DNA of 64,000 nucleotides. Origin: Schmidtea nova. Taxonomy: Eukaryota. Below are positions 3,020 to 64,000 of this stretch, in pieces. Positions within the stretch are counted from its first letter, which is position 1; each line of letters starts with the position of its first letter. The notes under the pieces were generated by a model. The model was not told the DNA's origin and made no database searches. It worked only from the letters and a program-made list of their open reading frames with translations. The translations under genes and the position numbers were made by a program. The stretch covers positions 393,452,001-393,516,000 of the forward strand of contig CM097882.1 of assembly GCA_044892505.1 (NCBI GenBank), in the 5' to 3' direction.

Positions 3020-3025
3020 TTTATT
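3020..3025 (-). promoter_or_regulatory. Candidate polyadenylation signal (AATAAA) of the mucin-like gene
   Basis: tttatt at 3020-3025 lies 17 nt past the TGA at 3043-3045. The context is AT-rich, so a chance match is possible. Confidence 0.35.
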
Positions 3026-3042
3026 TATCAATCAAAATGTTT

Positions 3043-3279
3043 TCAGGGGTGTGAACAAGTGTTAATGCATGCACATTGAGTTATACGTACATCCACCATG
3101 AATCCCTTGACCAGCGTATTGGTTGATTGTTTGATGCATGTGTATTCATAAGGTAAATTAACAGTGTATTGACTTGGCGAGCAGCATTTACAGGCCGAAT
3201 TTTGCACGAATCCCGGTGGCAATGTTGTAGGGTCATTTAGGAGCATTGCTGAATATTTGTTGAATTTCATTATCGGATT
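3043..3279 (-). CDS. Terminal exon, second half of C-terminal cystine knot (CTCK)
   Basis: Acceptor ttatttag at 3280-3281, phase 0. Reads NPIMKF...SACKCCSP...ITQCACINTCSHP-TGA, with the CxCC and CxC knot motifs. Confidence 0.88.
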   Translation of the reverse strand, partial: NPIMKFNKYSAMLLNDPTTLPPGFVQNSACKCCSPSQYTVNLPYEYTCIKQSTNTLVKGFMVDVRITQCACINTCSHP

Positions 3280-6200
3280 CTAAATAATCAAATAAGTTTA
3301 AAATTCCAATTTAAAAATTCTCCATACGTCAATTTCATCCAAACCGCGAAGAGAAGTCGACGTGCTGCATCCTCCACCACAAATGGTTTTTTCTATCATT
3401 TTTCCACCAGTAAGTTTACATATGTCTCCATTTTTCAACGTTAACTGATTCACTTTAATTGTGTTTACTTTGCATCTAGTAATAGCGGCGACGTAACAGC
3501 AATGGGTATCATCTACTATCAGTTTCGCACCACTCGAAACCAAGGCTTCATCTTCTAATGAGCAAGCAGGTAATCCATTTTTCACGTCTAGTGGTGATAC
3601 GGTCAATTTACCACGAGCACATAAATACAATTGACAAGAATTGGTATCCTTTTTAGTTTGTCCATTCTGAAAAAAAGAAAGCAAATAATGTTAATAAGAG
3701 CTAAATGAGACCAATATTCAACTGCGACAGCAAATAAAGAACCACCAAAGCATACTAATGAACATGACCAGTGTAAAAATGCAAATATTTTTACAAATAT
3801 ATAAGCTAAACGATCGTGTTAAATATAAAATAAAATGTTCGAATATAAATAAAAATATATACAAACATAAAATAAATAGTCCGAAAAGAAATGAAGGATT
3901 AAAAAAATTTACTAAACTATATTTCAGAACACTCAACACCAAGTACCCTCAATTTTTTTGAAAAATGATTTTAGATATTCGGAAGTTCTTATATCTTAAA
4001 TTCTAAACATTCAACATTATTATAGAATCGCAACTATTCTAGAACTCGGAATTATAAATGAAGAAATTGGAAAAAATGAAAATTAAAAAGATTTTAATCA
4101 TGACTTTTAAAATTCAACACTCAAGACGACTTAGAATAAAAATAGTTATCATTTCTTATCTTCATCTTGGATACTTCTTATTTTATTATCTAGACTAAAT
4201 CAATTTTTTTAAATGTACACAAATTTTCAGCGCAGCTTTTTTCAAGTGTGCATAACAAACTGATCTATAACAGACTAACAAATGAAAATTTTTAAAAGTA
4301 GTTAATAAATTGTTGTATCAAATTAACCACTAACCTGCCATATTGTTCCATTCACGTCACAGCGATAACATTCTGACGATGGCACGCATGTATTATTAAT
4401 ATTTCTGACGAACCCAGGTTGACATCTACAGCCCTCCTCACAAACATGAGTAGGATGCAATCTATTTATAACATCATCGCACGTCTGTTCACAGTAGCTA
4501 TTTTTCAACGAAAACGTGACATCTTTTTCACAGCATTTGGTGGCAGCATAGCAAATTTCTTCAGTACTATTCGGTCNNNNNNNNNNNNNNNNNNNNNNNN
4601 NNNNNNNNNNNNNNNNNNNNNNNNNNNNNNNNNNNNNNNNNNNNNNNNNNNNNNNNNNNNNNNNNNNNNNNNNNNNNNNNNNNNNNNNNNNNNNNNNNNN
4701 NNNNNNNNNNNNNNNNNNNNNNNNNNNNNNNNNNNNNNNNNNNNNNNNNNNNNNNNNNNNNNNNNNNNNNNNNNNNNNNNNNNNNNNNNNNNNNNNNNNN
4801 NNNNNNNNNNNNNNNNNNNNNNNNNNNNNNNNNNNNNNNNNNNNNNNNNNNTACGTTACCTTGACAGCCATTGCCACCATAAACGGCAGCTTGGGCAATT
4901 GTTCTTTCCAGTATTTGAACTCCTTTACCACAGGTAACATTACAAGGAGAAACAATCTTCCAATCACTCCATTGACAATCTTGCTGGCAAATATTATTTG
5001 TACAAATCCATTTTCCTTGTCGGCATGTGCTAAAGAAATATAAATCAAATTAACAATAGTGTTTGTTTTATTATTAAGTTTTACCAATTATTGCAATCTT
5101 TAGATAAAATTGTGTCAGGAAGTGATTCCTCCAAGTATCCAGAAGGTCTTGTTCCAAGTAAAAGTTCATTCCAAGTGCAACGACATTCCGATTTCGAAAC
5201 ACATTGACCGTCTTGTTCTAACATGTTGTCTGGACATGCGCAAGATTCAATACAGTCGATATTTGTACATCTTTTAGATAAATCACCACACCGTTGTTCA
5301 CAGGGGTTAACGCAGGAGAGTAGTTGTTTTGGTGCAACACACAGTTGGCCTATGCAATGAAAATGACACAATCATATAAATACAGTTGTGAAATTATTAT
5401 ATAAATAATTTTACTGCAATTTCCTAAATAGCAAGGTTCATAAACGACTTCGCAATTCTTTCCACCATTAACTGCTCTGACGACTTCTTGGGGAGTTTTT
5501 GTTACCATTCCATGTCCACAACTAGTATCACATTGGCTGCTATTTGCGGAACACAATTTAATGCATTCAGATGTTTCATAAGTCAAAACTTTACAATCAA
5601 CTGATTAAAAAAATTATTAATGGAGAATTGTTGGATTTAATGAAGGCTCTACCTGGACATTCCATTTGACAAGGTATGGTTCGATTTGTTTCACATTCTT
5701 CATTGGTATTTATAGATGGAATAAGTAAGTCTCTAACTTGTGTTATCACACCGTATGCTGTAGAGCTTCCAGTACAACACTGTGCATTGCAAGTAGTTTC
5801 ATTTATCCACTGTCCCATTACACAATTGACCTTGTAAAAGTCAATGAAGAATCACTGAAAATGAATCACAGGAATTATACTTGACATTTCATTGTGCAAG
5901 GTTCTGTTTCGATTCGTGGCCCGACGCATCTAGTTGAAAGGTCTTCACAAGGATCAATACAAATACGGTCTCTTGATCTGGTGCCATTAGGACAGTTACC
6001 AGAACAAATTGACCACGCTGACCATTCATTCCATGTAGCACCTTATTGTACAAAATAAATGAGTAAAATAATTGTCAAAGAAATATATTACTCGGTTTAT
6101 TATCCTCATTCGATGGTTGACATTCTCTTTGACCCGTAAAATTACAGAAACTAGATTGAATGAAATTATTAATATATAATGCTTAAGATATAGATTGTAA

Positions 6201-9200
6201 CGTAAAGGAAAGAGAAATTTTCATTTTAAACTGTCTTCTTGGTTAATTTTAAAAAATTTTAAAAATTTCTAACTCACCATTCCTGACAAGCTACATTAGA
6301 AGGCATTGGAGAACCACTGGGATATATTTGACTTGTTTCGCTGTCTGTACATGTAACACATGGTACTACATCGCACGGCTTAACATCTGAATCCGTGCCA
6401 ATGCATGACTGACCATTTCCTCTTTGCTCGCTACTTGTAGTTCGTATTCTCGTTTGATTACTAGCTCCACAAACTTTATTGCAAGGAGACCAATCTTGCC
6501 ACTGATTCCATGAACAATCACAATTATCATTCGGTATACAAACTGCTTGTCCATTTTCACAAACTCCAGTTTCACTAAAAACATATTTATTATCTTATAA
6601 TGTTCTAATCAAAATTAAATATTAAAAATTAGAAAAATACTAATAATTTTTAATAAATAATTTCCTTTTACAACGGGTAAGGCATAAATCATCGTATTTC
6701 CAGAATTATATCAGCTAGGAAATCATAGAATTTTTAAATAAGCACCAATGAGTAAAAACTACTTTCGAGATTTTCAGAGCTTTTTTCGTACAAACTCATT
6801 TGAAATTTGCAAAAATAAAGAAAATTTGTTCAAAAGAAAATGAAATAAATAACTTTTTATACATGTATTTCTTATTATGTTATGCTAACATATTTGAAAT
6901 TCTATCGAATGATGCATAATTTATTCAATTTTCTACTTGTGTAATATTTCAAAAAATTTATTAAAATATTAATTTTAATTTTTCCAGTTAATAATCATCA
7001 TATATAATTACGCTCATCACTGATTTTTTAACGCTCGCGGATTGCTTGATTCTAACAATATCATCATTTTTTTGAACTACTAATACTAACATAGATTTTT
7101 TACACGATTAACAAGTTTTAAACAGCGCTTTCTAAGTTTATTTTGCAAAATAAAAATTAAAAATTAATCAAGAGTTGCAAGTCAAGTGAAGGTACTTATT
7201 GAATCGAATCCACAGCAAGGAAATTTATTGAATGATCAAAGACAATTCACACGGAATGTAGTTTTTCAAGACGTTCTTCAATAAAAACAATTTTTTTGCC
7301 ATTCCATATATATAACAGAAATAATTTTCAATTGCTTAAGAATAAAAGAAATTGAATTTTTAATAAAAATTTCGTATATCAAATTGTTCATTTATTTTAT
7401 GATTTGTCAACGGGCGCCTAGTTTGTTATATAAAAGCCTTGAATATTAAATTCGTATTTTTATATCCATAAAAATAAAACTAGACACATGCTTGGAACTG
7501 CATTCACCAATTTATGAATTGTAGTTTATTTTTACAGATCTTTAATGAAAAACGATAATATTATTCAAAAAGTTTGAATATCGTATCGGAATTATGCATT
7601 AATTCATACATGTAACTTTCAATAAATTATTCAAATGAAAATTTGATTTAACTCCATTTCCAGACTAACTATAAATAAAAATAATGTGTAAAAAATGAAG
7701 ATAAAACAAATAAAATAAATCAATAGTGACAAAGATAAAAGATTTTACAGAAAACAAGAAGGTCTGGCAATGTTAAAATAATATTTGAAATTTAATAATC
7801 AATAAATTAAAAATTTAAAAATTGATTAATCTTTAAATACAATTTGTCAAAAATCAGTACAACTATTTTAAAAGTTTCTTTTCTCAAATAACAATTGAAA
7901 GTAACTAACCATGGTTTGCAATTAACTTGAGAAATGTCACAACATGTGTCGGATAATACACAATTTCCTAGCATATCCTCTACATATCCTGGTTTACAGA
8001 AACAACCGGTTATACAGTTCGATGATTCTTCACAACTTATTCCTCTATCTAATACATCATCGCAAGTTCTTGGACATGTAACATTATGGCATGCTATCTG
8101 AATTTTGTTTCCACTGCATAAAGGTGCTTAAGTTAAGAAAATATTGATTATAATTTGTTATTAGTAAACAACGTACTCGACGTTTCAGTTGTGCATGGGA
8201 ATTCATTGCAAGCAATAGTTACAATTGATGTATCAGAAGAAAGATCACACCCACTATTTAAAGGAGTTCTTGTTTTGTTTGTGGTTCCACCCCCGCAATT
8301 TTGAGAACATTCTGTCCAATGTGACCAAGGACTCCATTCACAAATGCAAGTATTTGGACAGTTATCAATTTCTTCATTGCCGTTTTGCTCACAGAATTTT
8401 CCTCCATAATTAGGTTGTTTAATTATTACACGACTTCGTATCTTAGATGCATTATCACAACCACCACTGCATTCGGACCATTCACTCCATCGTGACCACT
8501 GGCAATCTTTTTCTAAGAAAATGAGTACCATATCATTGTTAATTAATTACATTCAAAAATAAAATCTGAAAAACACTTTTGATGTTAGTTACAAAACGTT
8601 AAAATTTCTGCAGTTAGTGTTGATTAAATCTTATTAGGTAAATTTAAATTCTTGGTGCTTACCACCAGAACCATGGGCCATGAAAACCTGGAAACGCCGG
8701 ATAACAAGTAACCTTAAATCGATTTTTTATATCAAATTTACTATGTTTATTTAAAAAGTAGCAGATATTAATGTTGTCATAAAGATATTCAATTTAAAAA
8801 AAACATTAGTATAAAATCTAATTTTGCAATTAGGAATTTATCAATAATATCTTACTACTGACAAAGCTAACATCAGATCAACAAACAATTATCAGTAATA
8901 AAAAAGCATGATGTTTTAAAGACTTGCAAGATGGCAACTGAATTTTATTTTTTTAATGTCAGTATAATAAATAAAATATAGTTTGTTAATAAAATATTTC
9001 TATAACTTACTGGCTGAGACACAAGGTGAATCTTTTAATTAACACTTATAGAGCAACCAGTATACTTAAAATAAAATGATTAAGTTAATCAAATGGATTA
9101 AATTACATGACAATTATATTAACTTGACGTAAAAAATAAAAAAAAATTTCTTTCAAATCTAAAACCGTATGAGAGCGAGAACTGGAAAAAATCAAAAATA

Positions 9201-12200
9201 AAGGAAAAAATATTATTTGTGTAGTTAAGATATTTTAAAAATAAAAAATAAATATTAAGGTTGTTTTAATATTTCAGGAAATAATTTTTATTTGAGAGAA
9301 ATTTAACAAATAGGAGAATAACAAAGCTTGCTAATAAAATATAGTAAAAGGAAATATTTTCTAAAAATCAGATTCAACAAAATAGATCAATTTTAGAGGT
9401 AATAAAATCTTAATTTTATGAAAATTATTTAATTCAAATCTTATTAAAATAAATCATTAAAATTATTAAATAAACTTACTACAATTTTGGTCTTCCAAAC
9501 ATTCCAAATTGCCAATCTTACATAAACATTTTGCACAATTAAAGTAAACAGTTATGTTGGAGGCTACTGTTTGTCCATCTTCAATGATTTCCATGGGATT
9601 ACTTAGGCCGATTATATCATCCAATTCTACCCAAGCATCGATAATATCTCGATTGATTTTAAATTTAACATCAGAAAATAAAACATCACATTGACAATCA
9701 GAACTGTAGCACGAGTCGTATTGCCTTTCCGTCGTTGAACAATTTCTAGATCGAACTGTAAAGCCATTTCCACAAGAAACATTACACAGGGACCAATCAG
9801 ACCATTCAGAACATATAGGTAATGAGGTTGACAATATAGTAGTAGATATTATCGGGGAACTTGATAATGTGGATAATGTATAAGTTGGAGTAGTTCCAGA
9901 TGTTGACGACACCAATGATGATGTTGATGGTGTTGTTCCAGTTGTGAAGGTAACGGTAGGACTTGTTGTGGTATATCCTGAACTAGCTGTTGATTGAGTT
10001 GATGTGAATGGAGTAGATATTATCGGGGAACTTGATAATGTGGATAATGTATAAGTTGGAGTAGTTCCAGATGTTGACGACACCAATGATGATGTTGATG
10101 GTGTTGTTCCAGTTGTGAAGGTAACGGTAGGACTTGTTGTGGTATATCCTGAACTAGCTGTTGATTGAGTTGATGTGAATGGAGTGGATATTATCGGGGA
10201 ACTTGATAATGTGGATAATGTGAAAGTTGGAGTAGTTCCAGATGTTGAAGATACTTTTGGTGTAAAGCAACCGATAACTTCTAATCCGAATGATATCGTT
10301 GGTTTTGTGAGATCCCTAAATATGTGAATTATCAATTTTTGAAGTATTATTTTCTATTTTTTATAAATTTTTACTGATTAGTTTCGAATATAAATGTATT
10401 ATAAAATAAATTTAATTTGTCTTTTAGTTGTATCTTATGCTTTAGGCATTTGATTTACTGGTTAAAAATAAATTAATTTCGAAATCATAAATATAATAGT
10501 TCTACTTATTTTTATTCTCCAATTTCCTTTTACTAATAAATGGTTTTACTTTAATTATTCATTAAGTTTGGCATAAATTTTCTTTTCATTATAGATGCAT
10601 TTACCAGATCTTAAAGAAAAATATGATGGTTACATATATTAGTTAATTTATATATTCTGTTCAAATTTATGTTCTATTTTTATTTCATTTTGTACTCGAA
10701 TTTCTTTTGTTTAATAATAGAATTTTATTTATTCTTAAATACAAAACATTTTTTTACAAATTATTTTTCCAATCATTCATTTTTTATATTACATAAGTAT
10801 ATATAAAATGTAAAAAACAAATTAATCTTAAATGTAGAAAAACTTATGATATGGAAGATATATAATTAAAGTTTATATCGTACTTATTTTTTTTGTTTCT
10901 TTTCAAAGTTATTCACCTGAAAATTTTACTTGATAACGGCATATGATTTGAAAAGATGTTGAAAATTAGACTAAAATATAATGATTAGCAACTTACAAGC
11001 TTAGTATAGTTGTAATTGTGATTTGTATTCTTTGGACTTCGGAACCTGGATTTACTATTGGGGAAGACAATTTGTCCATCAATTTATTTGAATCTAGTAA
11101 ATCTCTTCCTGTCATTGTTACAGATGATTGGTCACCATTTACAAGAGTGACTGTTAATTTGACAGTTTTGACTAGAAGAGGGGTAGTAGCAACAAGATTG
11201 ATTTCATTGACTGCTGGAGATTGTGTTCCTTAAGACAATTAGTTGTAAATAAAATTTCTGCTTTGATGATAAAATAATTATCATTACCTTTTTGTGTTGG
11301 ATTGACATCGATAATAATCAGTGAACCAGTAATAGATAATCCTGAAGGAGTTCCGAGTTTTTGACTGGAATCAGTTTGTAGTTGATTCGAATCCACAGTA
11401 ACAGTAATATCAGAAGGTGGTATTTTCTATTTTATAATTAGTCATTAATTTTATAAAAAAATTATCTAGTTACATTTGTATCAGACATTCCGTTTTCAAT
11501 TTTACAAAGTGTGGGACTAGTAACAATTTTAGTAGATAATGTATAAGTAGGAGTAGTTCCAGATGATGACGACACCAATGATGATGTTGATGGTGTTGTT
11601 CCAGTTGTGAAGGTAACGGTAGGACTTGTTGTGGTATATCCTGAACTAGCTGTTGATTGAGTTGATGTGAATGGAGTAGATATTATCGGGGAACTTGATA
11701 ATGTGGATAATGTATAAGTTGGAGTAGTTCCAGATGATGACGACACCAATGATGATGTTGATGGTGTTGTTCCAGTTGTGAAGGTAACGGTAGGACTTGT
11801 TGTGGTATATCCTGAACTAGCTGTTGATTGAGTTGATGTGAATGGAGTAGATATTATCGGGGAACTTGATAATGTGGATAATGTATAAGTTGGAGTAGTT
11901 CCAGATGTTGACGACACCAATGATGATGTTGATGGTGTTGTTCCAGTTGTGAAGGTAACGGTAGGACTTGTTGTGGTATATCCTGAACTAGCTGTTGATT
12001 GAGTTGATGTGAATGGAGTAGATATTATCGGGGAACTTGATAATGTGGATAATGTATAAGTTGGAGTAGTTCCAGATGTTGACGACACCAATGATGATGT
12101 TGATGGTTTTGTTCCAGTTGTAAAGGTAACGGCAGGACTTGTTGTGGTATATCCTGAACTAGCTGTTGATTGAGTTGATGTGAATGGAGTGGATATTATC

Positions 12201-54200: not shown

Positions 54201-57200
54201 GTAGTCGTTGTTGTTGGTGCTGTTGTTAGTGTTGGTGTTGTTGTTGCTGATGTTGTGGTGGCAGATGTCGTTGTTATCGATGGTGTAGTAGTAACTTCTT
54301 TTGGAGTGAAGCAACCAATAACTTCTATGCTGATAGCTATTGTTGGATTTGTTTCATTTCTGAAACCATATTGTGATTATGTGGTTTAATTAATGAAATT
54401 TTAAAATTATGGATATAAAAAGAGTTGTTTGACTCATTCCATATTAGTTGCAATATAACAAAACTTACAAATTCGGAATTGTTGTAATGACGATTTCAAT
54501 TTTGTCGATTTCAGTTCCTGGCTTTACTGTTGGTGAAGTCATTTTGTCCAATAACTTTGGAGACTCTTCTAAATCTCTACCCGTGAAAACTTGAGTCGAT
54601 TTATCGCCATTATCCAATGTGACTGTCAAAACTACGACTTGAACATTTTCAGGCTTGTCAATGACAACATTGATCTCATTAACTGCAGGTGACTGTGTTT
54701 CTACATAAAATTTGGTTATAGAATACATGTTCCTAACAAGATGATATTAGAATTTACCTTTTTTTGTTGGATTAATTTCGAATACGACTTGTGAACCCGT
54801 AACTGGTAAACCTTGGGTTGTTCCGAGTTTTTCACTTGATTCTGTAGGTTGTAAAGTGTTGTCGACAGTTACTTTGATATCAGATGGTGGAATTGTCTAT
54901 AGAAATATAGTGAGGTTATTATTCATATTAATCATTTTAGTTTATGTTACATTTTTGTCTGTCATTCCATCTGTAACGAGACAAGGTATTGGACTTGTAG
55001 TCGTTGTTGTTGGTGCTGTTGTTAGTGTTGGTGTTGTTGTTGCTGATGTTGTGGTGGCAGATGTCGTTGTTATCGATGGTGTAGTAGTAACTTCTTTTGG
55101 AGTGAAGCAACCAATAACTTCTATGCTGATAGCTATTGTTGGATTTGTTTCATTTCTGAAACCATATTGTGATTATGTGGTTTAATTAATGAAATTTTAA
55201 AATTATGGATATAAAAAGAGTTGTTTGACTCATTCCATATTAGTTGCAATATAACAAAACTTACAAATTCGGAATTGTTGTAATGACGATTTCAATTTTG
55301 TCGATTTCAGTTCCTGGCTTTACTGTTGGTGAAGTCATTTTGTCCAATAACTTTGGAGACTCTTCTAAATCTCTACCCATGAAAACTTGAGTCGATTTAT
55401 CGCCATTATCCAATGTGACTGTCAAAACTACGACTTGAACATTTTCAGGCTTGTCAATGACAACATTGATCTCATTAACTGCAGGTGACTGTGTTTCTAC
55501 ATAAAATTTGGTTATAGAATACATGTTCCTAACAAGATGATATTAGAATTTACCTTTTTTTGTTGGATTAATTTCGAATACGACTTGTGAACCCGTAACT
55601 GGTAAACCTTGGGTTGTTCCGAGTTTTTCACTTGATTCTGTAGGTTGTAAAGTGTTGTCGACAGTTACTTTGATATCAGATGGTGGAATTGTCTATAGAA
55701 ATATAGTGAGGTTATTATTCATATTAATCATTTTAGTTTATGTTACATTTTTGTCTGTCATTCCATCTTTAACGAGACAAGGTATTGGACTTGTAGTCGT
55801 TGTTGTTGGTGCTGTTGTTAGTGTTGGTGTTGTTGTTGCTGATGTTGTGGTGGCAGATGTCGTTGTTATCGATGGTGTAGTAGTAACTTCTTTTGGAGTG
55901 AAGCAACCAATAACTTCTATGCTGATAGCTATTGTTGGATTTGTTTCATTTCTGAAACCATATTGTGATTATGTGGTTTAATTAATGAAATTTTAAAATT
56001 ATGGATATAAAAAGAGTTGTTTGACTCATTCCATATTAGTTGCAATATAACAAAACTTACAAATTCGGAATTGTTGTAATGACGATTTCAATTTTGTCGA
56101 TTTCAGTTCCTGGCTTTACTGTTGGTGAAGTCATTTTGTCCAATAACTTTGGAGACTCTTCTAAATCTCTACCCGTGAAAACTTGAGTCGATTTATCGCC
56201 ATTATCCAATGTGACTGTCAAAACTACGACTTGAACATTTTCAGGCTTGTCAATGACAACATTGATCTCATTAACTGCAGGTGACTGTGTTTCTACATAA
56301 AATTTGGTTATAGAATACATGTTCCTAACAAGATGATATGAGAATTTACCTTTTTTTGTTGGATTAATTTCGAATACGACTTGTGAACCCGTAACTGGTA
56401 AACCTTGGGTTGTTCCGAGTTTTTCACTTGATTCTGTAGGTTGTAAAGTGTTGTCAACAGTTACTTTGATATCAGATGGTGGAATTGTCTATAGAAATAT
56501 AGTGAGGTTATTATTCATATTAATCATTTTAGTTTATGTTACATTTTTGTCTGTCATTCCATCTTTAACGAGACAAGGTATTGGACTTGTAGTCGTTGTT
56601 GTTGGTGCTGTTGTTAGTGTTGGTGTTGTTGTTGCTGATGTTGTGGTGGCAGATGTCGTTGTTATCGATGGTGTAGTAGTAACTTCTTTTGGAGTGAAGC
56701 AACCAATAACTTCTATGCTGATAGCTATTGTTGGATTTGTTTCATTTCTGAAACCATATTGTGATTATGTGGTTTAATTAATGAAATTTTAAAATTATGG
56801 ATATAAAAAGAGTTGTTTGACTCATTCCATATTAGTTGCAATATAACAAAACTTACAAATTCGGAATTGTTGTAATGACGATTTCAATTTTGTCGATTTC
56901 AGTTCCTGGCTTTACTGTTGGTGAAGTCATTTTGTCCAATAACTTTGGAGACTCTTCTAAATCTCTACCCGTGAAAACTTGAGTCGATTTATCGCCATTA
57001 TCCAATGTGACTGTCAAAACTACGACTTGAACATTTTCAGGCTTGTCAATGACAACATTGATCTCATTAACTGCAGGTGACTGTGTTTCTACATAAAATT
57101 TGGTTATAGAATACATGTTCCTAACAAGATGATATTAGAATTTACCTTTTTTTGTTGGATTAATTTCGAATACGACTTGTGAACCCGTAACTGGTAAACC

Positions 57201-60200
57201 TTGGGTCGTTCCGAGTTTTTCACTTGATTCTGTAGGTTGTAAAGTGTTGTCGACAGTTACTTTGATATCAGATGGTGGAATTGTCTATAGAAATATAGTG
57301 AGGTTATTATTCATATTAATCATTTTAGTTTATGTTACATTTTTGTCTGTCATTCCATCTTTAACGAGACAAGGTATTGGACTTGTAGTCGTTGTTGTTG
57401 GTGCTGTTGTTAGTGTTGGTGTTGTTGTTGCTGATGTTGTGGTGGCAGATGTCGTTGTTATCGATGGTGTAGTAGTAACTTCTTTTGGAGTGAAGCAACC
57501 AATAACTTCTATGCTGATAGCTATTGTTGGATTTGTTTCATTTCTGAAACCATATTGTGATTATGTGGTTTAATTAATGAAATTTTAAAATTATGGATAT
57601 AAAAAGAGTTGTTTGACTCATTCCATATTAGTTGCAATATAACAAAACTTACAAATTCGGAATTGTTGTAATGACGATTTCAATTTTGTCGATTTCAGTT
57701 CCTGGCTTTACTGTTGGTGAAGTCATTTTGTCCAATAACTTTGGAGACTCTTCTAAATCTCTACCCGTGAAAACTTGAGTCGATTTATCGCCATTATCCA
57801 ATGTGACTGTCAAAACTACGACTTGAACATTTTCAGGCTTGTCAATGACAACATTGATCTCATTAACTGCAGGTGACTGTGTTTCTACATAAAATTTGGT
57901 TATAGAATACATGTTCCTAACAAGATGATATTAGAATTTACCTTTTTTTGTTGGATTAATTTCGAATACGACTTGTGAACCCGTAACTGGTAAACCTTGG
58001 GTTGTTCCGAGTTTTTCACTTGATTCTGTAGGTTGTAAAGTGTTGTCAACAGTTACTTTGATATCAGATGGTGGAATTGTCTATAGAAATATAGTGAGGT
58101 TATTATTCATATTAATCATTTTAGTTTATGTTACATTTTTGTCTGTCATTCCATCTTTAACGAGACAAGGTATTGGACTTGTAGTCGTTGTTGTTGGTGC
58201 TGTTGTTAGTGTTGGTGTTGTTGTTGCTGATGTTGTGGTGGCAGATGTCGTTGTTATCGATGGTGTAGTAGTAACTTCTTTTGGAGTGAAGCAACCAATA
58301 ACTTCTATGCTGATAGCTATTGTTGGATTTGTTTCATTTCTGAAACCATATTGTGATTATGTGGTTTAATTAATGAAATTTTAAAATTATGGATATAAAA
58401 AGAGTTGTTTGACTCATTCCATATTAGTTGCAATATAACAAAACTTACAAATTCGGAATTGTTGTAATGACGATTTCAATTTTGTCGATTTCAGTTCCTG
58501 GCTTTACTGTTGGTGAAGTCATTTTGTCCAATAACTTTGGAGACTCTTCTAAATCTCTACCCGTGAAAACTTGAGTCGATTTATCGCCATTATCCAATGT
58601 GACTGTCAAAACTACGACTTGAACATTTTCAGGCTTGTCAATGACAACATTGATCTCATTAACTGCAGGTGACTGTGTTTCTACATAAAATTTGGTTATA
58701 GAATACATGTTCCTAACAAGATGATATTAGAATTTACCTTTTTTTGTTGGATTAATTTCGAATACGACTTGTGAACCCGTAACTGGTAAACCTTGGGTTG
58801 TTCCGAGTTTTTCACTTGATTCTGTAGGTTGTAAAGTGTTGTCAACAGTTACTTTGATATCAGATGGTGGAATTGTCTATAGAAATATAGTGAGGTTATT
58901 ATTCATATTAATCATTTTAGTTTATGTTACATTTTTGTCTGTCATTCCATCTTTAACGAGACAAGGTATTGGACTTGTAGTCGTTGTTGTTGGTGCTGTT
59001 GTTAGTGTTGGTGTTGTTGTTGCTGATGTTGTGGTGGCAGATGTCGTTGTTATCGATGGTGTAGTAGTAACTTCTTTTGGAGTGAAGCAACCAATAACTT
59101 CTATGCTGATAGCTATTGTTGGATTTGTTTCATTTCTGAAACCATATTGTGATTATGTGGTTTAATTAATGAAATTTTAAAATTATGGATATAAAAAGAG
59201 TTGTTTGACTCATTCCATATTAGTTGCAATATAACAAAACTTACAAATTCGGAATTGTTGTAATGACGATTTCAATTTTGTCGATTTCAGTTCCTGGCTT
59301 TACTGTTGGTGAAGTCATTTTGTCCAATAACTTTGGAGACTCTTCTAAATCTCTACCCGTGAAAACTTGAGTCGATTTATCGCCATTATCCAATGTGACT
59401 GTCAAAACTACGACTTGAACATTTTCAGGCTTGTCAATGACAACATTGATCTCATTAACTGCAGGTGACTGTGTTTCTACATAAAATTTGGTTATAGAAT
59501 ACATGTTCCTAACAAGATGATATTAGAATTTACCTTTTTTTGTTGGATTAATTTCGAATACGACTTGTGAACCCGTAACTGGTAAACCTTGGGTCGTTCC
59601 GAGTTTTTCACTTGATTCTGTAGGTTGTAAAGTGTTGTCGACAGTTACTTTGATATCAGATGGTGGAATTGTCTATAGAAATATAGTGAGGTTATTATTC
59701 ATATTAATCATTTTAGTTTATGTTACATTTTTGTCTGTCATTCCATCTTTAACGAGACAAGGTATTGGACTTGTAGTCGTTGTTGTTGGTGCTGTTGTTA
59801 GTGTTGGTGTTGTTGTTGCTGATGTTGTGGTGGCAGATGTCGTTGTTATCGATGGTGTAGTAGTAACTTCTTTTGGAGTGAAGCAACCAATAACTTCTAT
59901 GCTGATAGCTATTGTTGGATTTGTTTCATTTCTGAAACCATATTGTGATTATGTGGTTTAATTAATGAAATTTTAAAATTATGGATATAAAAAGAGTTGT
60001 TTGACTCATTCCATATTAGTTGCAATATAACAAAACTTACAAATTCGGAATTGTTGTAATGACGATTTCAATTTTGTCGATTTCAGTTCCTGGCTTTACT
60101 GTTGGTGAAGTCATTTTGTCCAATAACTTTGGAGACTCTTCTAAATCTCTACCCGTGAAAACTTGAGTCGATTTATCGCCATTATCCAATGTGACTGTCA

Positions 60201-63200
60201 AAACTACGACTTGAACATTTTCAGGCTTGTCAATGACAACATTGATCTCATTAACTGCAGGTGACTGTGTTTCTACATAAAATTTGGTTATAGAATACAT
60301 GTTCCTAACAAGATGATATTAGAATTTACCTTTTTTTGTTGGATTAATTTCGAATACGACTTGTGAACCCGTAACTGGTAAACCTTGGGTTGTTCCGAGT
60401 TTTTCACTTGATTCTGTAGGTTGTAAAGTGTTGTCAACAGTTACTTTGATATCAGATGGTGGAATTGTCTATAGAAATATAGTGAGGTTATTATTCATAT
60501 TAATCATTTTAGTTTATGTTACATTTTTGTCTGTCATTCCATCTTTAACGAGACAAGGTATTGGACTTGTAGTCGTTGTTGTTGGTGCTGTTGTTAGTGT
60601 TGGTGTTGTTGTTGCTGATGTTGTGGTGGCAGATGTCGTTGTTATCGATGGTGTAGTAGTAACTTCTTTTGGAGTGAAGCAACCAATAACTTCTATGCTG
60701 ATAGCTATTGTTGGATTTGTTTCATTTCTGAAACCATATTGTGATTATGTGGTTTAATTAATGAAATTTTAAAATTATGGATATAAAAAGAGTTGTTTGA
60801 CTCATTCCATATTAGTTGCAATATAACAAAACTTACAAATTCGGAATTGTTGTAATGACGATTTCAATTTTGTCGATTTCAGTTCCTGGCTTTACTGTTG
60901 GTGAAGTCATTTTGTCCAATAACTTTGGAGACTCTTCTAAATCTCTACCCGTGAAAACTTGAGTCGATTTATCGCCATTATCCAATGTGACTGTCAAAAC
61001 TACGACTTGAACATTTTCAGGCTTGTCAATGACAACATTGATCTCATTAACTGCAGGTGACTGTGTTTCTACATAAAATTTGGTTATAGAATACATGTTC
61101 CTAACAAGATGATATTAGAATTTACCTTTTTTTGTTGGATTAATTTCGAATACGACTTGTGAACCCGTAACTGGTAAACCTTGGGTTGTTCCGAGTTTTT
61201 CACTTGATTCTGTAGGTTGTAAAGTGTTGTCAACAGTTACTTTGATATCAGATGGTGGAATTGTCTATAGAAATATAGTGAGGTTATTATTCATATTAAT
61301 CATTTTAGTTTATGTTACATTTTTGTCTGTCATTCCATCTTTAACGAGACAAGGTATTGGACTTGTAGTCGTTGTTGTTGGTGCTGTTGTTAGTGTTGGT
61401 GTTGTTGTTGCTGATGTTGTGGTGGCAGATGTCGTTGTTATCGATGGTGTAGTAGTAACTTCTTTTGGAGTGAAGCAACCAATAACTTCTATGCTGATAG
61501 CTATTGTTGGATTTGTTTCATTTCTGAAACCATATTGTGATTATGTGGTTTAATTAATGAAATTTTAAAATTATGGATATAAAAAGAGTTGTTTGACTCA
61601 TTCCATATTAGTTGCAATATAACAAAACTTACAAATTCGGAATTGTTGTAATGACGATTTCAATTTTGTCGATTTCAGTTCCTGGCTTTACTGTTGGTGA
61701 AGTCATTTTGTCCAATAACTTTGGAGACTCTTCTAAATCTCTACCCGTGAAAACTTGAGTCGATTTATCGCCATTATCCAATGTGACTGTCAAAACTACG
61801 ACTTGAACATTTTCAGGCTTGTCAATGACAACATTGATCTCATTAACTGCAGGTGACTGTGTTTCTACATAAAATTTGGTTATAGAATACATGTTCCTAA
61901 CAAGATGATATTAGAATTTACCTTTTTTTGTTGGATTAATTTCGAATACGACTTGTGAACCCGTAACTGGTAAACCTTGGGTCGTTCCGAGTTTTTCACT
62001 TGATTCTGTAGGTTGTAAAGTGTTGTCGACAGTTACTTTGATATCAGATGGTGGAATTGTCTATAGAAATATAGTGAGGTTATTATTCATATTAATCATT
62101 TTAGTTTATGTTACATTTTTGTCTGTCATTCCATCTTTAACGAGACAAGGTATTGGACTTGTAGTCGTTGTTGTTGGTGCTGTTGTTAGTGTTGGTGTTG
62201 TTGTTGCTGATGTTGTGGTGGCAGATGTCGTTGTTATCGATGGTGTAGTAGTAACTTCTTTTGGAGTGAAGCAACCAATAACTTCTATGCTGATAGCTAT
62301 TGTTGGATTTGTTTCATTTCTGAAACCATATTGTGATTATGTGGTTTAATTAATGAAATTTTAAAATTATGGATATAAAAAGAGTTGTTTGACTCATTCC
62401 ATATTAGTTGCAATATAACAAAACTTACAAATTCGGAATTGTTGTAATGACGATTTCAATTTTGTCGATTTCAGTTCCTGGCTTTACTGTTGGTGAAGTC
62501 ATTTTGTCCAATAACTTTGGAGACTCTTCTAAATCTCTACCCGTGAAAACTTGAGTCGATTTATCGCCATTATCCAATGTGACTGTCAAAACTACGACTT
62601 GAACATTTTCAGGCTTGTCAATGACAACATTGATCTCATTAACTGCAGGTGACTGTGTTTCTACATAAAATTTGGTTATAGAATACATGTTCCTAACAAG
62701 ATGATATTAGAATTTACCTTTTTTTGTTGGATTAATTTCGAATACGACTTGTGAACCCGTAACTGGTAAACCTTGGGTTGTTCCGAGTTTTTCACTTGAT
62801 TCTGTAGGTTGTAAAGTGTTGTCAACAGTTACTTTGATATCAGATGGTGGAATTGTCTATAGAAATATAGTGAGGTTATTATTCATATTAATCATTTTAG
62901 TTTATGTTACATTTTTGTCTGTCATTCCATCTTTAACGAGACAAGGTATTGGACTTGTAGTCGTTGTTGTTGGTGCTGTTGTTAGTGTTGGTGTTGTTGT
63001 TGCTGATGTTGTGGTGGCAGATGTCGTTGTTATCGATGGTGTAGTAGTAACTTCTTTTGGAGTGAAGCAACCAATAACTTCTATGCTGATAGCTATTGTT
63101 GGATTTGTTTCATTTCTGAAACCATATTGTGATTATGTGGTTTAATTAATGAAATTTTAAAATTATGGATATAAAAAGAATTGTTTGACTCATTCCATAT

Positions 63201-63911
63201 TAGTTGCAATATAACAAAACTTACAAATTCGGAATTGTTGTAATGACGATTTCAATTTTGTCGATTTCAGTTCCTGGCTTTACTGTTGGTGAAGTCATTT
63301 TGTCCAATAACTTTGGAGACTCTTCTAAATCTCTACCCGTGAAAACTTGAGTCGATTTATCGCCATTATCCAATGTGACTGTCAAAACTACGACTTGAAC
63401 ATTTTCAGGCTTGTCAATGACAACATTGATCTCATTAACTGCAGGTGACTGTGTTTCTACATAAAATTTGGTTATAGAATACATGTTCCTAACAAGATGA
63501 TATTAGAATTTACCTTTTTTTGTTGGATTAATTTCGAATACGACTTGTGAACCCGTAACTGGTAAACCTTGGGTCGTTCCGAGTTTTTCACTTGATTCTG
63601 TAGGTTGTAAAGTGTTGTCAACAGTTACTTTGATATCAGATGGTGGAATTGTCTATAGAAATATAGTGAGGTTATTATTCATATTAATCATTTTAGTTTA
63701 TGTTACATTTTTGTCTGTCATTCCATCTTTAACGAGACAAGGTATTGGACTTGTAGTCGTTGTTGTTGGTGCTGTTGTTAGTGTTGGTGTTGTTGTTGCT
63801 GATGTTGTGGTGGCAGATGTCGTTGTTATCGATGGTGTAGTAGTAACTTCTTTTGGAGTGAAGCAACCAATAACTTCTATGCTGATAGCTATTGTTGGAT
63901 TTGTTTCATTT
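3043..63911 (-). CDS. Giant multi-exon gel-forming-mucin / SCO-spondin-like secreted protein (3' part; 5' end beyond window), about 13,800 aa in window
   Basis: GT-AG exons were traced manually with compatible phases from 63911 to the stop at 3043, except across the N gap. Content: PTS repeats, a 151-aa two-Cys domain x39, LDLa-like, TSP1, TIL, VWC-like modules and a cystine knot. Summed exon length is about 41.4 kb including the 275 N. Confidence 0.85.
3328..3666 (-). CDS. Exon: VWC-like module end and first half of cystine knot
   Basis: Acceptor tttttttcag at 3667-3668; donor GTATGG at 3327; phases 0/0. Reads NGQTKKDTNSCQLYLC...HCCY...CKVNT...TICGGGC (CxGxC knot motif). Confidence 0.85.
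4335..5029 (-). CDS. Exon(s) spanning the N gap: VWC end, TSP1, TIL, VWC start
   Basis: Acceptor tctttag at 5030-5031, phase 2: (C)TCRQGKWIC...DCQWSDWKIVSPCNVTCGKGVQILERT. After the gap: CEQTCDD...CEEGCRCQPGFVRNINNTCVPSSEC. Donor CAG/GTTAGT at 4334. Internal structure is unknown across the Ns. Confidence 0.7.
4577..4851. other. Assembly gap (275 N) inside coding region
   Basis: Run of N from 4577 to 4851. Confidence 1.
5085..5349 (-). CDS. Exon: TIL domain plus VWC-like start
   Basis: Acceptor ttgcatag; donor TG/GTAAAA; phases 1/2. Reads CVAPKQLLSCVNPCEQRCGDLSKRCTNIDCIESCACPDNMLEQDGQCVSKSEC. Confidence 0.88.
5415..5600 (-). CDS. Exon: atypical TSP1-like module
   Basis: Acceptor ttaatcag; donor A/GTAAAA; phases 1/1. 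Reads DCKVLTYETSEC...CDTSCGHGMVTKT...GGKNCEVVYEPCYLGNC. Confidence 0.82.
5653..5830 (-). CDS. Exon: TSP1-like module
   Basis: Acceptor acaag; donor G/GTAGAG; phases 0/1. Reads VNCVMGQWINETTCNAQCC...ITQVRD...CETNRTIPCQMECP. Confidence 0.82.
5881..6041 (-). CDS. Exon: TSP1 repeat
   Basis: Acceptor caataag; donor CAA/GTATAA; phases 1/0. Reads ATWNEWSAWSICSGNCPNGTRSRDRIC...CVGPRIETEPC. Confidence 0.88.
6092..6150 (-). CDS. Small exon (59 nt), end of VWC-like module
   Basis: Acceptor caatctag; donor A/GTAATA; phases 2/1, matching both neighbours. Reads (C)FCNFTGQRECQPSNEDNKP. Confidence 0.78.
6278..6574 (-). CDS. Exon: Cys module end, TSP1 repeat, VWC-like start
   Basis: Acceptor tttttag; donor TG/GTGAGT; phases 2/2. 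Reads ETGVCENGQAVC...CSWNQWQDWSPCNKVCGASNQTRIR...GQSCIGTDSDVKPC. The listed ORF 6366-6584 is the wrong frame. Confidence 0.88.
7168..7421 (+). mobile_element. Probable Helitron 3'-end relic (helicase C-terminus fragment plus CTAG end) within an intron
   Basis: 7168-7284 translates to SRVASQVKVLIESNPQQGNLLNDQRQFTRNVVFQDVLQ*, resembling the Helitron RepHel C-terminus (SRV...VKV...QG.L....FT.NVV..E/D.L*). A GC-rich cgggcgcCTAG followed by T lies at 7411-7422. Confidence 0.55.
7910..8126 (-). CDS. Exon: TIL domain
   Basis: Acceptor cttaag; donor TG/GTTAGT; phases 1/2. Reads CSGNKIQIACHNVTCPRTCDD...CITGCFCKPGYVEDMLGNCVLSDTC. Confidence 0.88.
8177..8512 (-). CDS. Exon: two TSP1 repeats
   Basis: Acceptor tttcttag; donor A/GTACGT; phases 1/1. 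Reads DCQWSRWSEWSECSGGC...KIRSR and CEWSPWSHWTECSQNCGGGTTNKTR. Confidence 0.9.
9480..10315 (-). CDS. Exon: end of last two-Cys domain, 2 PTS repeats, TSP1, VWC-like module
   Basis: Acceptor atatttag at 10316-10317, phase 2; donor A/GTAAGT at 9479. Reads DLTKPTISFGLEVIGC...CSEWSDWSLCNVSCGNGFTVRSRNC...CAKCLCKIGNLEC. Confidence 0.9.
10997..12320 (-). CDS. Array-1 unit: exons 11474-12320 (4 PTS repeats), 11288-11426, 10997-11228
   Basis: GT-AG introns of 47, 59 and 681 bp; phases 0, 1, 2. Encodes ...CKIENGMSDTN/KIPPSDITVT...NPTQK/GTQSPAVNEIN...ITTILSL. Confidence 0.9.
13002..14496 (-). CDS. Array-1 unit: exons 13479-14496 (5 repeats), 13293-13431, 13002-13233
   Basis: Same splice sites and phases as the 10997 unit; 349-aa ORF fragment. 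Confidence 0.88.
15178..17527 (-). CDS. Array-1 unit: exons 15655-17527 (10 repeats), 15469-15607, 15178-15409
   Basis: Same splice sites; 634-aa ORF fragment. Confidence 0.88.
18209..19874 (-). CDS. Array-1 unit: exons 18686-19874 (6 repeats), 18500-18638, 18209-18440
   Basis: Same splice sites; 406-aa ORF fragment. Confidence 0.88.
20556..22221 (-). CDS. Array-1 unit: exons 21033-22221 (6 repeats), 20847-20985, 20556-20787
   Basis: Same splice sites; 406-aa ORF fragment. Confidence 0.88.
22903..24910 (-). CDS. Array-1 unit: exons 23380-24910 (8 repeats), 23194-23332, 22903-23134
   Basis: Same splice sites; 520-aa ORF fragment. Confidence 0.88.
25592..28283 (-). CDS. Array-1 unit: exons 26069-28283 (12 repeats), 25883-26021, 25592-25823
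   Basis: Same splice sites; 748-aa ORF fragment. Confidence 0.88.
28965..30972 (-). CDS. Array-1 unit: exons 29442-30972 (8 repeats), 29256-29394, 28965-29196
   Basis: Same splice sites; 520-aa ORF fragment. Confidence 0.88.
31654..33661 (-). CDS. Array-1 unit: exons 32131-33661 (8 repeats), 31945-32083, 31654-31885
   Basis: Same splice sites; 520-aa ORF fragment. Confidence 0.88.
34343..35495 (-). CDS. Array-1 unit: exons 34820-35495 (3 repeats), 34634-34772, 34343-34574
   Basis: Same splice sites; 235-aa ORF fragment. Confidence 0.88.
36177..38013 (-). CDS. Array-1 unit: exons 36654-38013 (7 repeats), 36468-36606, 36177-36408
   Basis: Same splice sites; 463-aa ORF fragment. Confidence 0.88.
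38695..40702 (-). CDS. Array-1 unit: exons 39172-40702 (8 repeats), 38986-39124, 38695-38926
   Basis: Same splice sites; 520-aa ORF fragment. Confidence 0.88.
41384..42891 (-). CDS. First array-1 unit: exons 41861-42891 (unique Thr-rich lead plus 4 full repeats), 41675-41813, 41384-41615
   Basis: Acceptor aataaatag at 42892-42893, phase 1. Reads TETTESTTIITEVTENIATTKLTTTKRTTTKPSTP..., in frame with ORF 41849-42646. Confidence 0.85.
42935..43215 (-). CDS. Junction exon: end of array-2 domain, Thr-rich stretch, LDLa-like six-Cys module
   Basis: Acceptor ggtttcag, phase 2; donor G/GTAAAT, phase 1; 43-bp intron to the next exon. Reads NETNPTIAISIEVIGC...YCEIEETFCEDIMGNMICAKNCDNIAECKNPNLDEPLSCK. 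This exon is missing from the ORF track. Confidence 0.82.
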
Positions 63912-64000
63912 CTGAAACCATATTGTGATTATGTGGTTTAATTAATGAAATTTTAAAATTATGGATATAAAAAGAGTTGTTTGACTCATTCCATATTAGT
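43126..64000. repeat. Array 2: 26 tandem copies of a 796-bp three-exon/three-intron unit (continues past window end)
   Basis: ORF fragments recur at exactly 43321+796k (k=0..25). Only scattered substitutions and no indels were seen. Confidence 0.98.
43325..63911 (-). CDS. Array-2 exons: A 43807-44011 (205 nt), B 43614-43752 (139 nt), C 43325-43556 (232 nt), each +796k; 192 aa per unit
   Basis: Introns of 54 bp (GTAACA..TAG), 57 bp (GTAAAT..TAG) and 109 bp (GTAAGT..CAG); phases 0, 1, 2; 576 coding + 220 intronic = 796 bp. Unit: NETNPTIAISIEVIGCFTPKEVTTTPSITTTSATTTSATTTPTLTTAPTTTTTSPIPCLVKDGMTDKN/TIPPSDIKVTVDNTLQPTESSEKLGTTQGLPVTGSQVVFEINPTKK/ETQSPAVNEINVVIDKPENVQVVVLTVTLDNGDKSTQVFTGRDLEESPKLLDKMTSPTVKPGTEIDKIEIVITTIPNL. 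Confidence 0.9.

What the first reader, a model, noticed from the sequence alone, without database searches (positions are those of the whole stretch)
3043..63911. Titin-scale secreted mucin-like gene assembled from two homogenised exon-intron arrays
Seen: continuous phase-compatible exons give about 13,800 aa in the window, with the N-terminus still missing. There are 39 copies of one globular domain, 91 copies of a 57-aa PTS repeat, then TSP1/TIL/VWC-like modules and a cystine knot. No stop or frameshift was seen in any repeat copy. Known: MUC2/MUC5AC/MUC5B intersperse PTS with CysD domains, mostly in one large exon, and dimerise via CTCK; SCO-spondin carries TSP1, TIL, LDLa and one F5/8C domain. 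Inference: this is a beads-on-a-glycosylated-string polymer architecture I do not recognise from characterised proteins, plausibly a mucus, adhesive or structural fibre component.
Basis: partly seen in the sequence, partly recalled or inferred. Interest (0 to 1): 0.88.

Follow-up and report, generated by a model that had tools for sequence, protein, structure and literature searches.

The report
Giant flatworm mucin-like glue protein gene
This is a real, intact gene for a giant secreted sugar-coated protein of a planarian flatworm, built from two near-identical tandem arrays of exons; it is large and tidy, but similar giant glue and mucus proteins of flatworms are already described.

Summary
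A spliced model on the minus strand reads 13,438 aa without a stop before the gap at 4577-4851. Another 271 aa follow it, ending in TGA (3045-3043) and AATAAA.

It has 26 units of 796 bp, each with three exons, then a 6-Cys spacer. Thirteen longer units follow, with the same exon geometry plus 57-aa Ser/Thr repeats (92 in register). The tail holds TSP1, TIL, VWC-like and cystine-knot-like modules. That gives 39 copies of a 151-aa two-cysteine domain.

Both arrays are about 99.8% identical, introns included. The two domain types differ (57% identity, dN/dS 0.29, introns unalignable), so the exons are under selection. K-mer depth in one DNA run fits 13 B units; two other samples suggest about 5.

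The "unrecognised architecture" claim does not hold. Flatworm adhesion protein 2 (Mlig-ap2, 14,794 aa) and five planarian SCO-spondin/mucin-like loci share the plan. The repeated domain has no detectable homologue or confident fold.

No RNA evidence was found. The 5' end lies outside the window, and the frame across the gap cannot be tested. Unchecked notes of this scan report two other giant secreted genes in this genome.

The parts
43216..63911 (-). Array A: 26 complete 796-bp units. Each has exon a (205 nt), intron (54), exon b (139), intron (57), exon c (232) and intron (109). Each encodes 192 aa: a 151-aa Cys-to-Cys domain plus a 41-aa Thr/Pro linker. The array runs on beyond the window end.
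   Evidence: Only 9 variable columns in 796; 12 units are identical.
56857..57543 (-). Example A unit: exon a 57543-57339, exon b 57284-57146, exon c 57088-56857. Intron phases are 0, 1 and 2. The domain starts at the end of exon a and closes in the next exon a.
42935..43215 (-). Junction exon: the last strand of the 26th A domain, a Thr-rich stretch and a 6-Cys spacer that looks vaguely LDLa-like but gets no Pfam hit. It ends at a GT donor in phase 1.
42892..42934 (-). 43-bp GT..AG intron that joins the A part to the B part. This is the only inferred link between the two arrays.
10997..42891 (-). Array B: a first PTS exon (42891-41861), then 13 units of exon b (139), intron (59), exon c (232), intron (681) and exon a. 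Each complete exon a is 163 + n x 171 nt, with n = 3 to 12. The paralogous 151-aa domain is 57% identical to type A. There are 92 units of 57 aa (171 bp), counting those in the first tail exon.
9480..10315 (-). First tail exon. One open frame holds the end of the 13th B domain, about 2.4 repeats of 57 aa, the first TSP1 and a Cys-rich VWC-like stretch. This physically ties array B to the tail.
4852..8512 (-). Tail exons 8512-8177 (TSP1 x2), 8126-7910 (TIL), 6574-6278 (VWC-like end, TSP1, VWC-like start), 6150-6092, 6041-5881 (TSP1), 5830-5653 and 5600-5415 (weak TSP1-like), 5349-5085 (TIL, VWC-like) and 5029-4852 (VWC-like end, then a TSP1 cut by the gap).
   Evidence: Contigs of four runs cover these exons without any difference.
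4577..4851 (.). Assembly gap (N), lying inside a TSP1 module or just after it. Its length and frame are unknown.
3043..4574 (-). Exons after the gap: 4574-4335 (end of TSP1, TIL, VWC-like start), 3666-3328 (VWC-like, cystine-knot start) and 3279-3043 (cystine-knot end, with TGA at 3045-3043).
   Evidence: The cystine knot rests on its Cys signature only.
3020..3025 (-). AATAAA polyadenylation signal, 18 nt after the stop codon.

Best explanation
This is one intact gene for a giant secreted glycoprotein of a planarian flatworm, with at least 13,709 aa in the window and its 5' end beyond the window. Small beta-rich domains of 151 aa are each closed by a Cys at either end. They are strung on Thr/Ser/Pro-rich linkers that are probably O-glycosylated: 41 aa in the first array and 198-711 aa in the second. 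An 1,165-aa tail with 10% cysteine follows, made of TSP1, TIL and VWC-like modules and ending in a cystine-knot-like motif. By analogy, that tail would pair molecules tail to tail, and the unseen N-terminus (expected VWD-C8-TIL) would link them into polymers. The plan matches flatworm adhesion protein 2 and the planarian SCO-spondin/mucin-like giant matrix proteins, so the likeliest role is a mucus or adhesive polymer. Shown: exon structure, open frame, domain content of the tail, DNA-level homogeneity of each array, and purifying selection between the two domain types. Inferred: secretion, glycosylation, multimerisation, tissue and function. Each array is kept uniform, introns included, most likely by unequal crossing-over or gene conversion, and unit number probably varies between individuals.
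For: Regular splice sites and phases, 117/117 GT-AG, and no stop in 41 kb of spliced sequence. A and B domains: 57% identical, no indel, dN/dS 0.29 at dS about 1.1, and introns no better aligned than shuffled ones. TSP1 and TIL score above Pfam's cut-offs. S+T+P is 70-76% in the linkers. Single open frames join domain, repeat and TSP1. TGA is followed by AATAAA. Variants inside the arrays are shared by neighbouring units and show a three-unit period. In run X1 the per-contig k-mer depth of a B-unit contig over a unique tail contig is 1020.7/74.3 = 13.7, against 13 units in the assembly. For a PTS contig it is 6024/74.3 = 81, against 92 units that include variants. Literature on the architecture: PMC6410801, PMC8621496, PMC9229212, PMC6453901.
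Against: There is no RNA evidence: the runs that hold the stretch look like DNA. No signal peptide or N-terminal domain is visible. The frame across the gap is unknown. The VWC-like and cystine-knot modules have no profile hit. No sequence comparison with any ap2 or S. mediterranea locus was possible, and three word-index searches and one full phmmer scan found no relative. Tmed-ap2 is 22.5% lysine (PMC9229212), whereas this protein has 4% Lys and is net acidic. The copy number of array A was not checked against reads.
Confidence: 0.75

Rival explanations
1. The unit numbers are an assembly product: the real arrays in the sequenced animal are much shorter or longer, because near-identical 796-bp and 171-bp units cannot be placed reliably.
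For: 12 of 26 A units are identical and the mean difference is 1.7 bases per 796. In runs X2-X4 (two other samples) the B-unit to unique depth ratio is only about 4-5. Array A was not checked.
Against: In X1 the ratio is 13.7, against 13 assembled B units, and about 81 for the 171-bp repeat. Variants are shared by adjacent units and follow a three-unit period, as expected for real arrays and useful as anchors. If the genome is Schmidtea nova, as earlier unchecked notes say, its published assembly was built from PacBio HiFi reads (PMC11410931).
Confidence: 0.15
2. It is the planarian orthologue of SCO-spondin: a thread-forming glycoprotein of the nervous system that has merely gained repeats.
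For: The tail alternates TSP1 with TIL and VWC-like modules and ends in a cystine-knot-like motif. The best TSP1 hits are to the spondin-type model.
Against: About 90% of the visible protein is Ser/Thr-rich repeat plus an orphan domain, which SCO-spondin lacks. No LDLa or F5/8C hit was found. Cote et al. judged the comparable S. mediterranea proteins closer to mucins (PMC6453901).
Confidence: 0.1
3. The locus is not one expressed gene. It could be a silent or decaying tandem amplification, or the arrays and the Cys-rich tail could be separate transcription units.
For: No RNA run holds the stretch. The longest transcript in the published S. nova annotation is 36,224 bp (PMC11410931), shorter than this coding sequence, if the genome is that species. 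Differences within each array are too few to show selection.
Against: There is no stop or frameshift in 120 array exons and 13 tail exons. Purifying selection acts between the A and B domains. Single exons bridge domain to PTS to TSP1. The tail exons are identical in three samples.
Confidence: 0.07

Closest known systems
Flatworm adhesion protein 2 (Mlig-ap2 of Macrostomum lignano; Tmed-ap2 of Theama mediterranea; Mile-ap2 of Minona ileanae)
   Same: Giant size (14,794 aa in Mlig-ap2). Two consecutive central arrays of repeats of roughly 220-330 aa make up most of the protein. The C-terminus carries TIL and TSP1 domains. The protein is O-glycosylated and occurs in flatworms (PMC6410801, PMC8621496, PMC9229212).
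   Different: Sequence relatedness was not tested. This gene has a longer tail with VWC-like and cystine-knot-like modules and a second array with variable 57-aa Ser/Thr repeats. It is low in lysine (Tmed-ap2 has 22.5% Lys). The repeats here are exon-intron units, whereas Mile-ap2 has an exon of at least 15 kb. Adhesive proteins of planarians themselves appear not to have been characterised.
Planarian giant matrix proteins of Cote et al. 2019 (five S. mediterranea loci: VWD-C8-TIL, repetitive region, vWC/TSP/CT)
   Same: Same animal group. Same order of a repetitive core followed by vWC, TSP and C-terminal knot. The authors describe them as intermediate between SCO-spondin and mucins (PMC6453901).
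   Different: The repetitive regions were given as about 500-2,000 aa, against more than 12,000 aa here. The content of their repeats is not described in the text I read. Orthology was not tested.
SCO-spondin
   Same: TSP1 modules interleaved with TIL and VWC-like modules, and a C-terminal cystine knot.
   Different: SCO-spondin has no mucin-type Ser/Thr arrays. Its LDLa cluster and F5/8C domain were not detected here.
Gel-forming mucins (MUC2, MUC5AC, MUC5B)
   Same: Long Ser/Thr/Pro repeats interrupted by small folded domains, and a C-terminal knot for dimerisation.
   Different: The interspersed domain has two Cys and is not a CysD. There is no VWD in the tail, and TSP1 modules are present. 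The repeats are spread over 120 exons and not held in one large exon.
Human LPA kringle IV-2 array (from my own knowledge, not tested here)
   Same: A protein domain encoded by a multi-exon unit that is tandemly repeated, kept almost identical introns included, and variable in copy number between individuals.
   Different: Unrelated protein. Its unit is a two-exon 5.5-kb unit and it has fewer copies.

Membership tests
Flatworm adhesion protein 2 (ap2) | Two consecutive central tandem-repeat arrays that make up most of the protein | tested here: met
   26 or more units of 192 aa, then 13 larger units; together about 12,440 of 13,709 aa.
Flatworm adhesion protein 2 (ap2) | C-terminal region with TIL and TSP1 domains | tested here: met
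   Pfam finds six TSP_1 and three TIL above their cut-offs.
Flatworm adhesion protein 2 (ap2) | N-terminal signal peptide, VWD, C8, TIL and LDLa | not testable with these tools
   The 5' end lies beyond the window end at 64000.
Flatworm adhesion protein 2 (ap2) | Sequence homology to Mlig-ap2, Tmed-ap2 or Mile-ap2 | tested here: inconclusive
   No ap2 sequence could be fetched. phmmer of the domain against 1.84 billion representatives gave only one spurious hit. [quoted passage not shown]
Flatworm adhesion protein 2 (ap2) | Expression in adhesive gland cells and loss of adhesion on RNAi | not testable with these tools
   No RNA run was found.
Planarian VWD / repeat / vWC-TSP-CT giant matrix proteins (PMC6453901) | A repetitive core followed by vWC, TSP and CT domains | tested here: met
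   The repeat core and TSP1 are shown. vWC and CT rest on Cys signatures only.
SCO-spondin | LDLa cluster and one F5/8C domain | tested here: not met
   Pfam gives no hit on the 6-Cys spacer or on the 143-aa domain ORF at E up to 0.1. The N-terminal part is unseen.
SCO-spondin | Many TSP1 interleaved with TIL/VWC, and a C-terminal cystine knot | tested here: met
   The knot rests on its signature only.
Gel-forming mucins | CysD domains between PTS stretches, and VWD-VWC-CTCK at the C-terminus | tested here: not met
   The interspersed domain has only two Cys and no Pfam family. There is no VWD hit in any tail ORF.
F5/8 type C (discoidin) or galactose-binding-like domain | Profile match, or a jelly-roll fold of about 150 aa with a Cys at each end | tested here: inconclusive
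   The length (151 aa) and terminal Cys fit. There is no PF00754 hit, only a weak SAC9 GBDL hit at E 0.094. The AF2 model has pLDDT 55.7. The best structural Z is 6.3, with DOC/APC10, CBM and F5/8C chains at Z 4.8-5.7, which is within background. The intact spliced domain could not be submitted because it has no reference.

The most novel reading that the evidence does not exclude
The 151-aa bead is a lineage-specific binding domain of a fold not yet catalogued. This net-acidic, glycosylated bead string would be the surface-binding half of a two-component planarian glue. Its partner would be the strongly basic, lysine-rich giant repeat protein noted elsewhere in this genome (s1-356147, unchecked). 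Array length would vary between individuals and tune the properties of the mucus or glue.
Probability: 0.2. Interest if true: 0.6.

Novelty: new member of a known kind. Interest (0 to 1): 0.42.

Why it matters
The adhesive and mucus proteins of planarians, the main flatworm models for regeneration, appear not to have been characterised. The published flatworm glue papers stress that such genes cannot be resolved from transcriptomes alone. This locus gives a nearly complete, exon-level model of one such gene. It shows that the repeats are exon-intron units homogenised at the DNA level, and it points to copy-number differences between animals. It also isolates a 151-aa domain, with at least 39 copies, that has no detectable relative and can be expressed and tested for glycan or surface binding. 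It is not a new kind of protein.

Tried and rejected
1. Homologue searches found nothing usable. These were a word-index search with the domain ORF, with the TSP1/VWC-like part of the first tail exon and with the double-TSP1 exon, plus a full phmmer scan of 1.84 billion representatives. The single hit, P0001, is an unrelated repeat protein that matches only on 'VVLEVNPT'.
2. PDB sequence searches with the domain, its small profile and the two cystine-knot ORFs gave nothing meaningful.
3. AF2 on the 143-aa read-through ORF gave pLDDT 53 alone and 55.7 with a six-row alignment. Foldseek and VIA-align matches stay within background.
5. The intact spliced domain and the spliced cystine knot have no reference, so they were not sent to Pfam, AF2 or the search tools. 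The 143-aa ORF that was used lacks the first 11 and last 16 residues and carries 19 intron-encoded residues.
6. The supplement of PMC6410801 holds the Mlig-ap2 repeat alignments only as images, so no comparison was possible.
7. An LDLa reading of the 6-Cys spacer was rejected: no Pfam hit, and the C3-C4 spacing does not fit.
8. The 144-aa ORFs on the + strand in every A unit were rejected as mirror frames of the Thr-rich linker.
9. No inverted-repeat structure explains the high-copy repeat in the long intron.
10. I could not verify the species name given in earlier notes.
Full report
**What is there.** The window is AT-rich (about 30% G+C), with a strong G-over-C skew on the + strand from 10 kb onward. 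The coding strand is the minus strand. Tandem Repeats Finder reports fourteen blocks of a 171-bp unit between 9.8 and 42.8 kb. Stop-to-stop frames show a 796-bp periodicity from 43 to 64 kb and a 2-2.7 kb periodicity from 10 to 43 kb.

**The two arrays.** Reading one unit of each kind in three frames gave the exon plan. I then located all twelve splice-site contexts by pattern.
- Array A has 26 complete units with exons of 205, 139 and 232 nt and introns of 54, 57 and 109 nt.
- Array B has 13 units with the same 139- and 232-nt exons and introns of 47, 59 and 681 nt.
- In array B, each complete exon a is 163 + n x 171 nt long, with n = 3 to 12.
- Intron phases are 0, 1 and 2 in both arrays, and all 117 array exons are flanked by AG and GT.
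- The repeating genomic unit is permuted against the protein domain. Exon a carries the last strand of one domain, the linker, and the first residues of the next domain.

**Joining the parts.** The first translation broke at the A/B border. A further 43-bp GT..AG intron (42934-42892, phase 1) sits there, after a short 6-Cys spacer. I built the tail from open frames and phase-compatible splice sites. The full model reads 13,438 aa with no stop up to the gap and 271 aa after it. It ends in TGA at 3045-3043, with AATAAA 18 nt further on.

- 39 complete domains.

**Continuity.** Single open frames tie the pieces together. The exon 10315-9480 holds the end of a B domain, 57-aa repeats, a TSP1 and a Cys-rich stretch. 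The exon 42891-41861 runs from the spacer side into the repeats and the start of the first B domain. Only the 43-bp intron links A to B by inference.

**The gap (4577-4851).**
- The upstream flank is open to the last base and is a TSP1 cut at profile position 37 of 49.
- The downstream flank is open from its first base. It begins with a C-x5-C that would close a TSP1 and continues with a complete TIL.
- The module order TSP1, TIL, VWC-like occurs twice earlier in the tail, so the two sides most likely belong together.
- With the nominal 275 N the frames differ by one. The length is only an estimate, so the frame cannot be tested.
- No listed contig spans the gap. The contigs that cover its upstream flank run 19-37 letters into it. 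I did not read or use those letters.

**Is it coding?** Within each array there is almost no variation.
- Array A has 9 variable columns in 796, and 12 of its 26 units are identical.
- The 1,308-nt B block has 15 variable columns, 12 of them in the 681-nt intron.
- The homogeneity therefore lies at the DNA level and says nothing about selection.

Between the arrays the picture differs. The two domain types are 57% identical over 151 aa without an indel. dN/dS is 0.29 at dS about 1.1, and the introns align no better than shuffled sequence. It is the main evidence that the exons are real and constrained.

**Are the arrays real?** The few variants are not random. In array A two columns follow a three-unit period over the first nine units, and other variants are shared by adjacent units. 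In array B the variants split the array into contiguous blocks.

Four public runs from one study hold the stretch, introns included, so they are DNA. Their contigs cover the unique tail exons without a single difference. Per-contig k-mer depth in run X1:

| Contig | Depth | Ratio to unique | In the assembly |
|---|---|---|---|
| Unique tail | 74.3 | 1 | 1 |
| B unit | 1020.7 | 13.7 | 13 |
| 171-bp repeat | 6024 | 81 | 92 units, including variants |

In X2-X4, from two other samples, the ratios are about 4-5 for the B unit and 44-55 for the repeat. That points to copy-number differences between animals. The tool warns that summed depth is not a copy number, so this is a lead.

**What the parts are.**
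- Pfam finds TSP_1 above its cut-off six times, two further weak TSP1-like modules, and TIL three times.
- VWC-like stretches and the C-terminal knot rest on cysteine patterns only (CGGGC, CKCCSP, CACINTC). They have no Pfam or PDB sequence hit, partly because introns split them.
- The tail is 1,165 aa with 10.4% Cys.
- The linkers are 70-76% Ser+Thr+Pro.
- The 6-Cys spacer is not recognised as LDLa.

**The bead domain.** It has 151 aa, a Cys at each end, only two aromatic residues and a net charge of about -9. It has no Pfam family and no true relative in 1.84 billion representative proteins. AlphaFold2 on the only referable version gives an all-beta model of low confidence: pLDDT 53, and 55.7 with a small alignment. 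That version is a 143-aa read-through ORF, which exists because one unit lost the stop in its 57-nt intron.

Structure searches stay within background. The best Z is 6.3. Galactose-binding-like sandwiches (DOC/APC10, CBMs, an F5/8C chain, muskelin) and TRAF/MATH domains sit at Z 4.7-6. A discoidin-like jelly roll is therefore a lead from length, terminal cysteines and these weak matches. It is not a result.

**Comparison with what is known.** Earlier notes of this scan identify the genome as a planarian, one naming Schmidtea nova. I could not test this. The G+C content and short introns fit, and the published S. nova assembly is 1.25 Gb at 28% G+C from HiFi reads (PMC11410931).

In flatworms the architecture is already described:
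- Mlig-ap2 has 14,794 aa. It has VWD, TIL and LDLa domains at the N-terminus, 21 x 255-aa followed by 25 x 221-aa repeats, and TSP1/TIL at the C-terminus. It is glycosylated, lies in adhesive vesicles and footprints, and is needed for attachment (PMC6410801, PMC8621496).
- Tmed-ap2 has 7,228 aa, with two repeat arrays followed by TSP1 and TIL (PMC9229212).
- In S. mediterranea, five large loci encode VWD-C8-TIL, a repetitive region, then vWC, TSP and CT. The authors describe them as between SCO-spondin and mucins (PMC6453901).

The present gene fits that kind. Differences are the size of the repeat core, the orphan bead domain, the variable Ser/Thr repeats of the second array, the exon-intron nature of the repeats and the low lysine content. 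Homology to any ap2 could not be tested.

**Mechanism.**
- Shown: an intact open gene with extracellular module types, and DNA-level homogenisation of each array.
- Inferred: secretion, dense O-glycosylation of the linkers, tail-to-tail pairing through the knot, N-terminal multimerisation, and a role in mucus or adhesion.
- The homogeneity and the nested variation in repeat number are best explained by unequal crossing-over or gene conversion.

**Verdict.** This is a new, unusually well-resolved member of a known class of giant flatworm secreted glycoproteins, with an uncharacterised repeated domain.

Noticed in passing
window 6930-7420 (inside the 1,335-bp intron 7909-6575): This is a very high-copy dispersed repeat. 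Summed contig depth is 30,000-57,000 in X1 against about 70 for unique sequence, and contigs break at its edges. It probably accounts for the length of this intron.
   Followed up: partly
window 56293-56349 (intron 2 of the tenth A unit): A single A-to-C change removes the in-frame stop of the 57-nt intron. Exon b, the intron and exon c then form one 143-aa open frame (56488-56060). This copy was used as the referable query.
   Followed up: yes
window 43607-63938, + strand (for example 57139-57570): Every A unit carries a 144-aa open frame on the opposite strand. These are mirror frames of the Thr-rich linker and domain exons, not genes.
   Followed up: partly
window 9827-10800: The depth ratio of B-unit contigs to unique contigs is 13.7 in run X1 but about 4-5 in X2-X4 (two other samples). 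For the 171-bp repeat it is about 81 against 44-55. This suggests copy-number variation between animals.
   Followed up: partly
window 56800-63911 (first nine A units): Two variable columns of array A (unit positions 291 and 336) repeat with a period of three units. This hints at a higher-order repeat of 2,388 bp.
   Followed up: no
window 4852 (upstream edge of the N gap): The contigs that cover the flank run 19-37 letters into the gap, and none of those listed reaches the other side. I did not read the letters.
   Followed up: no
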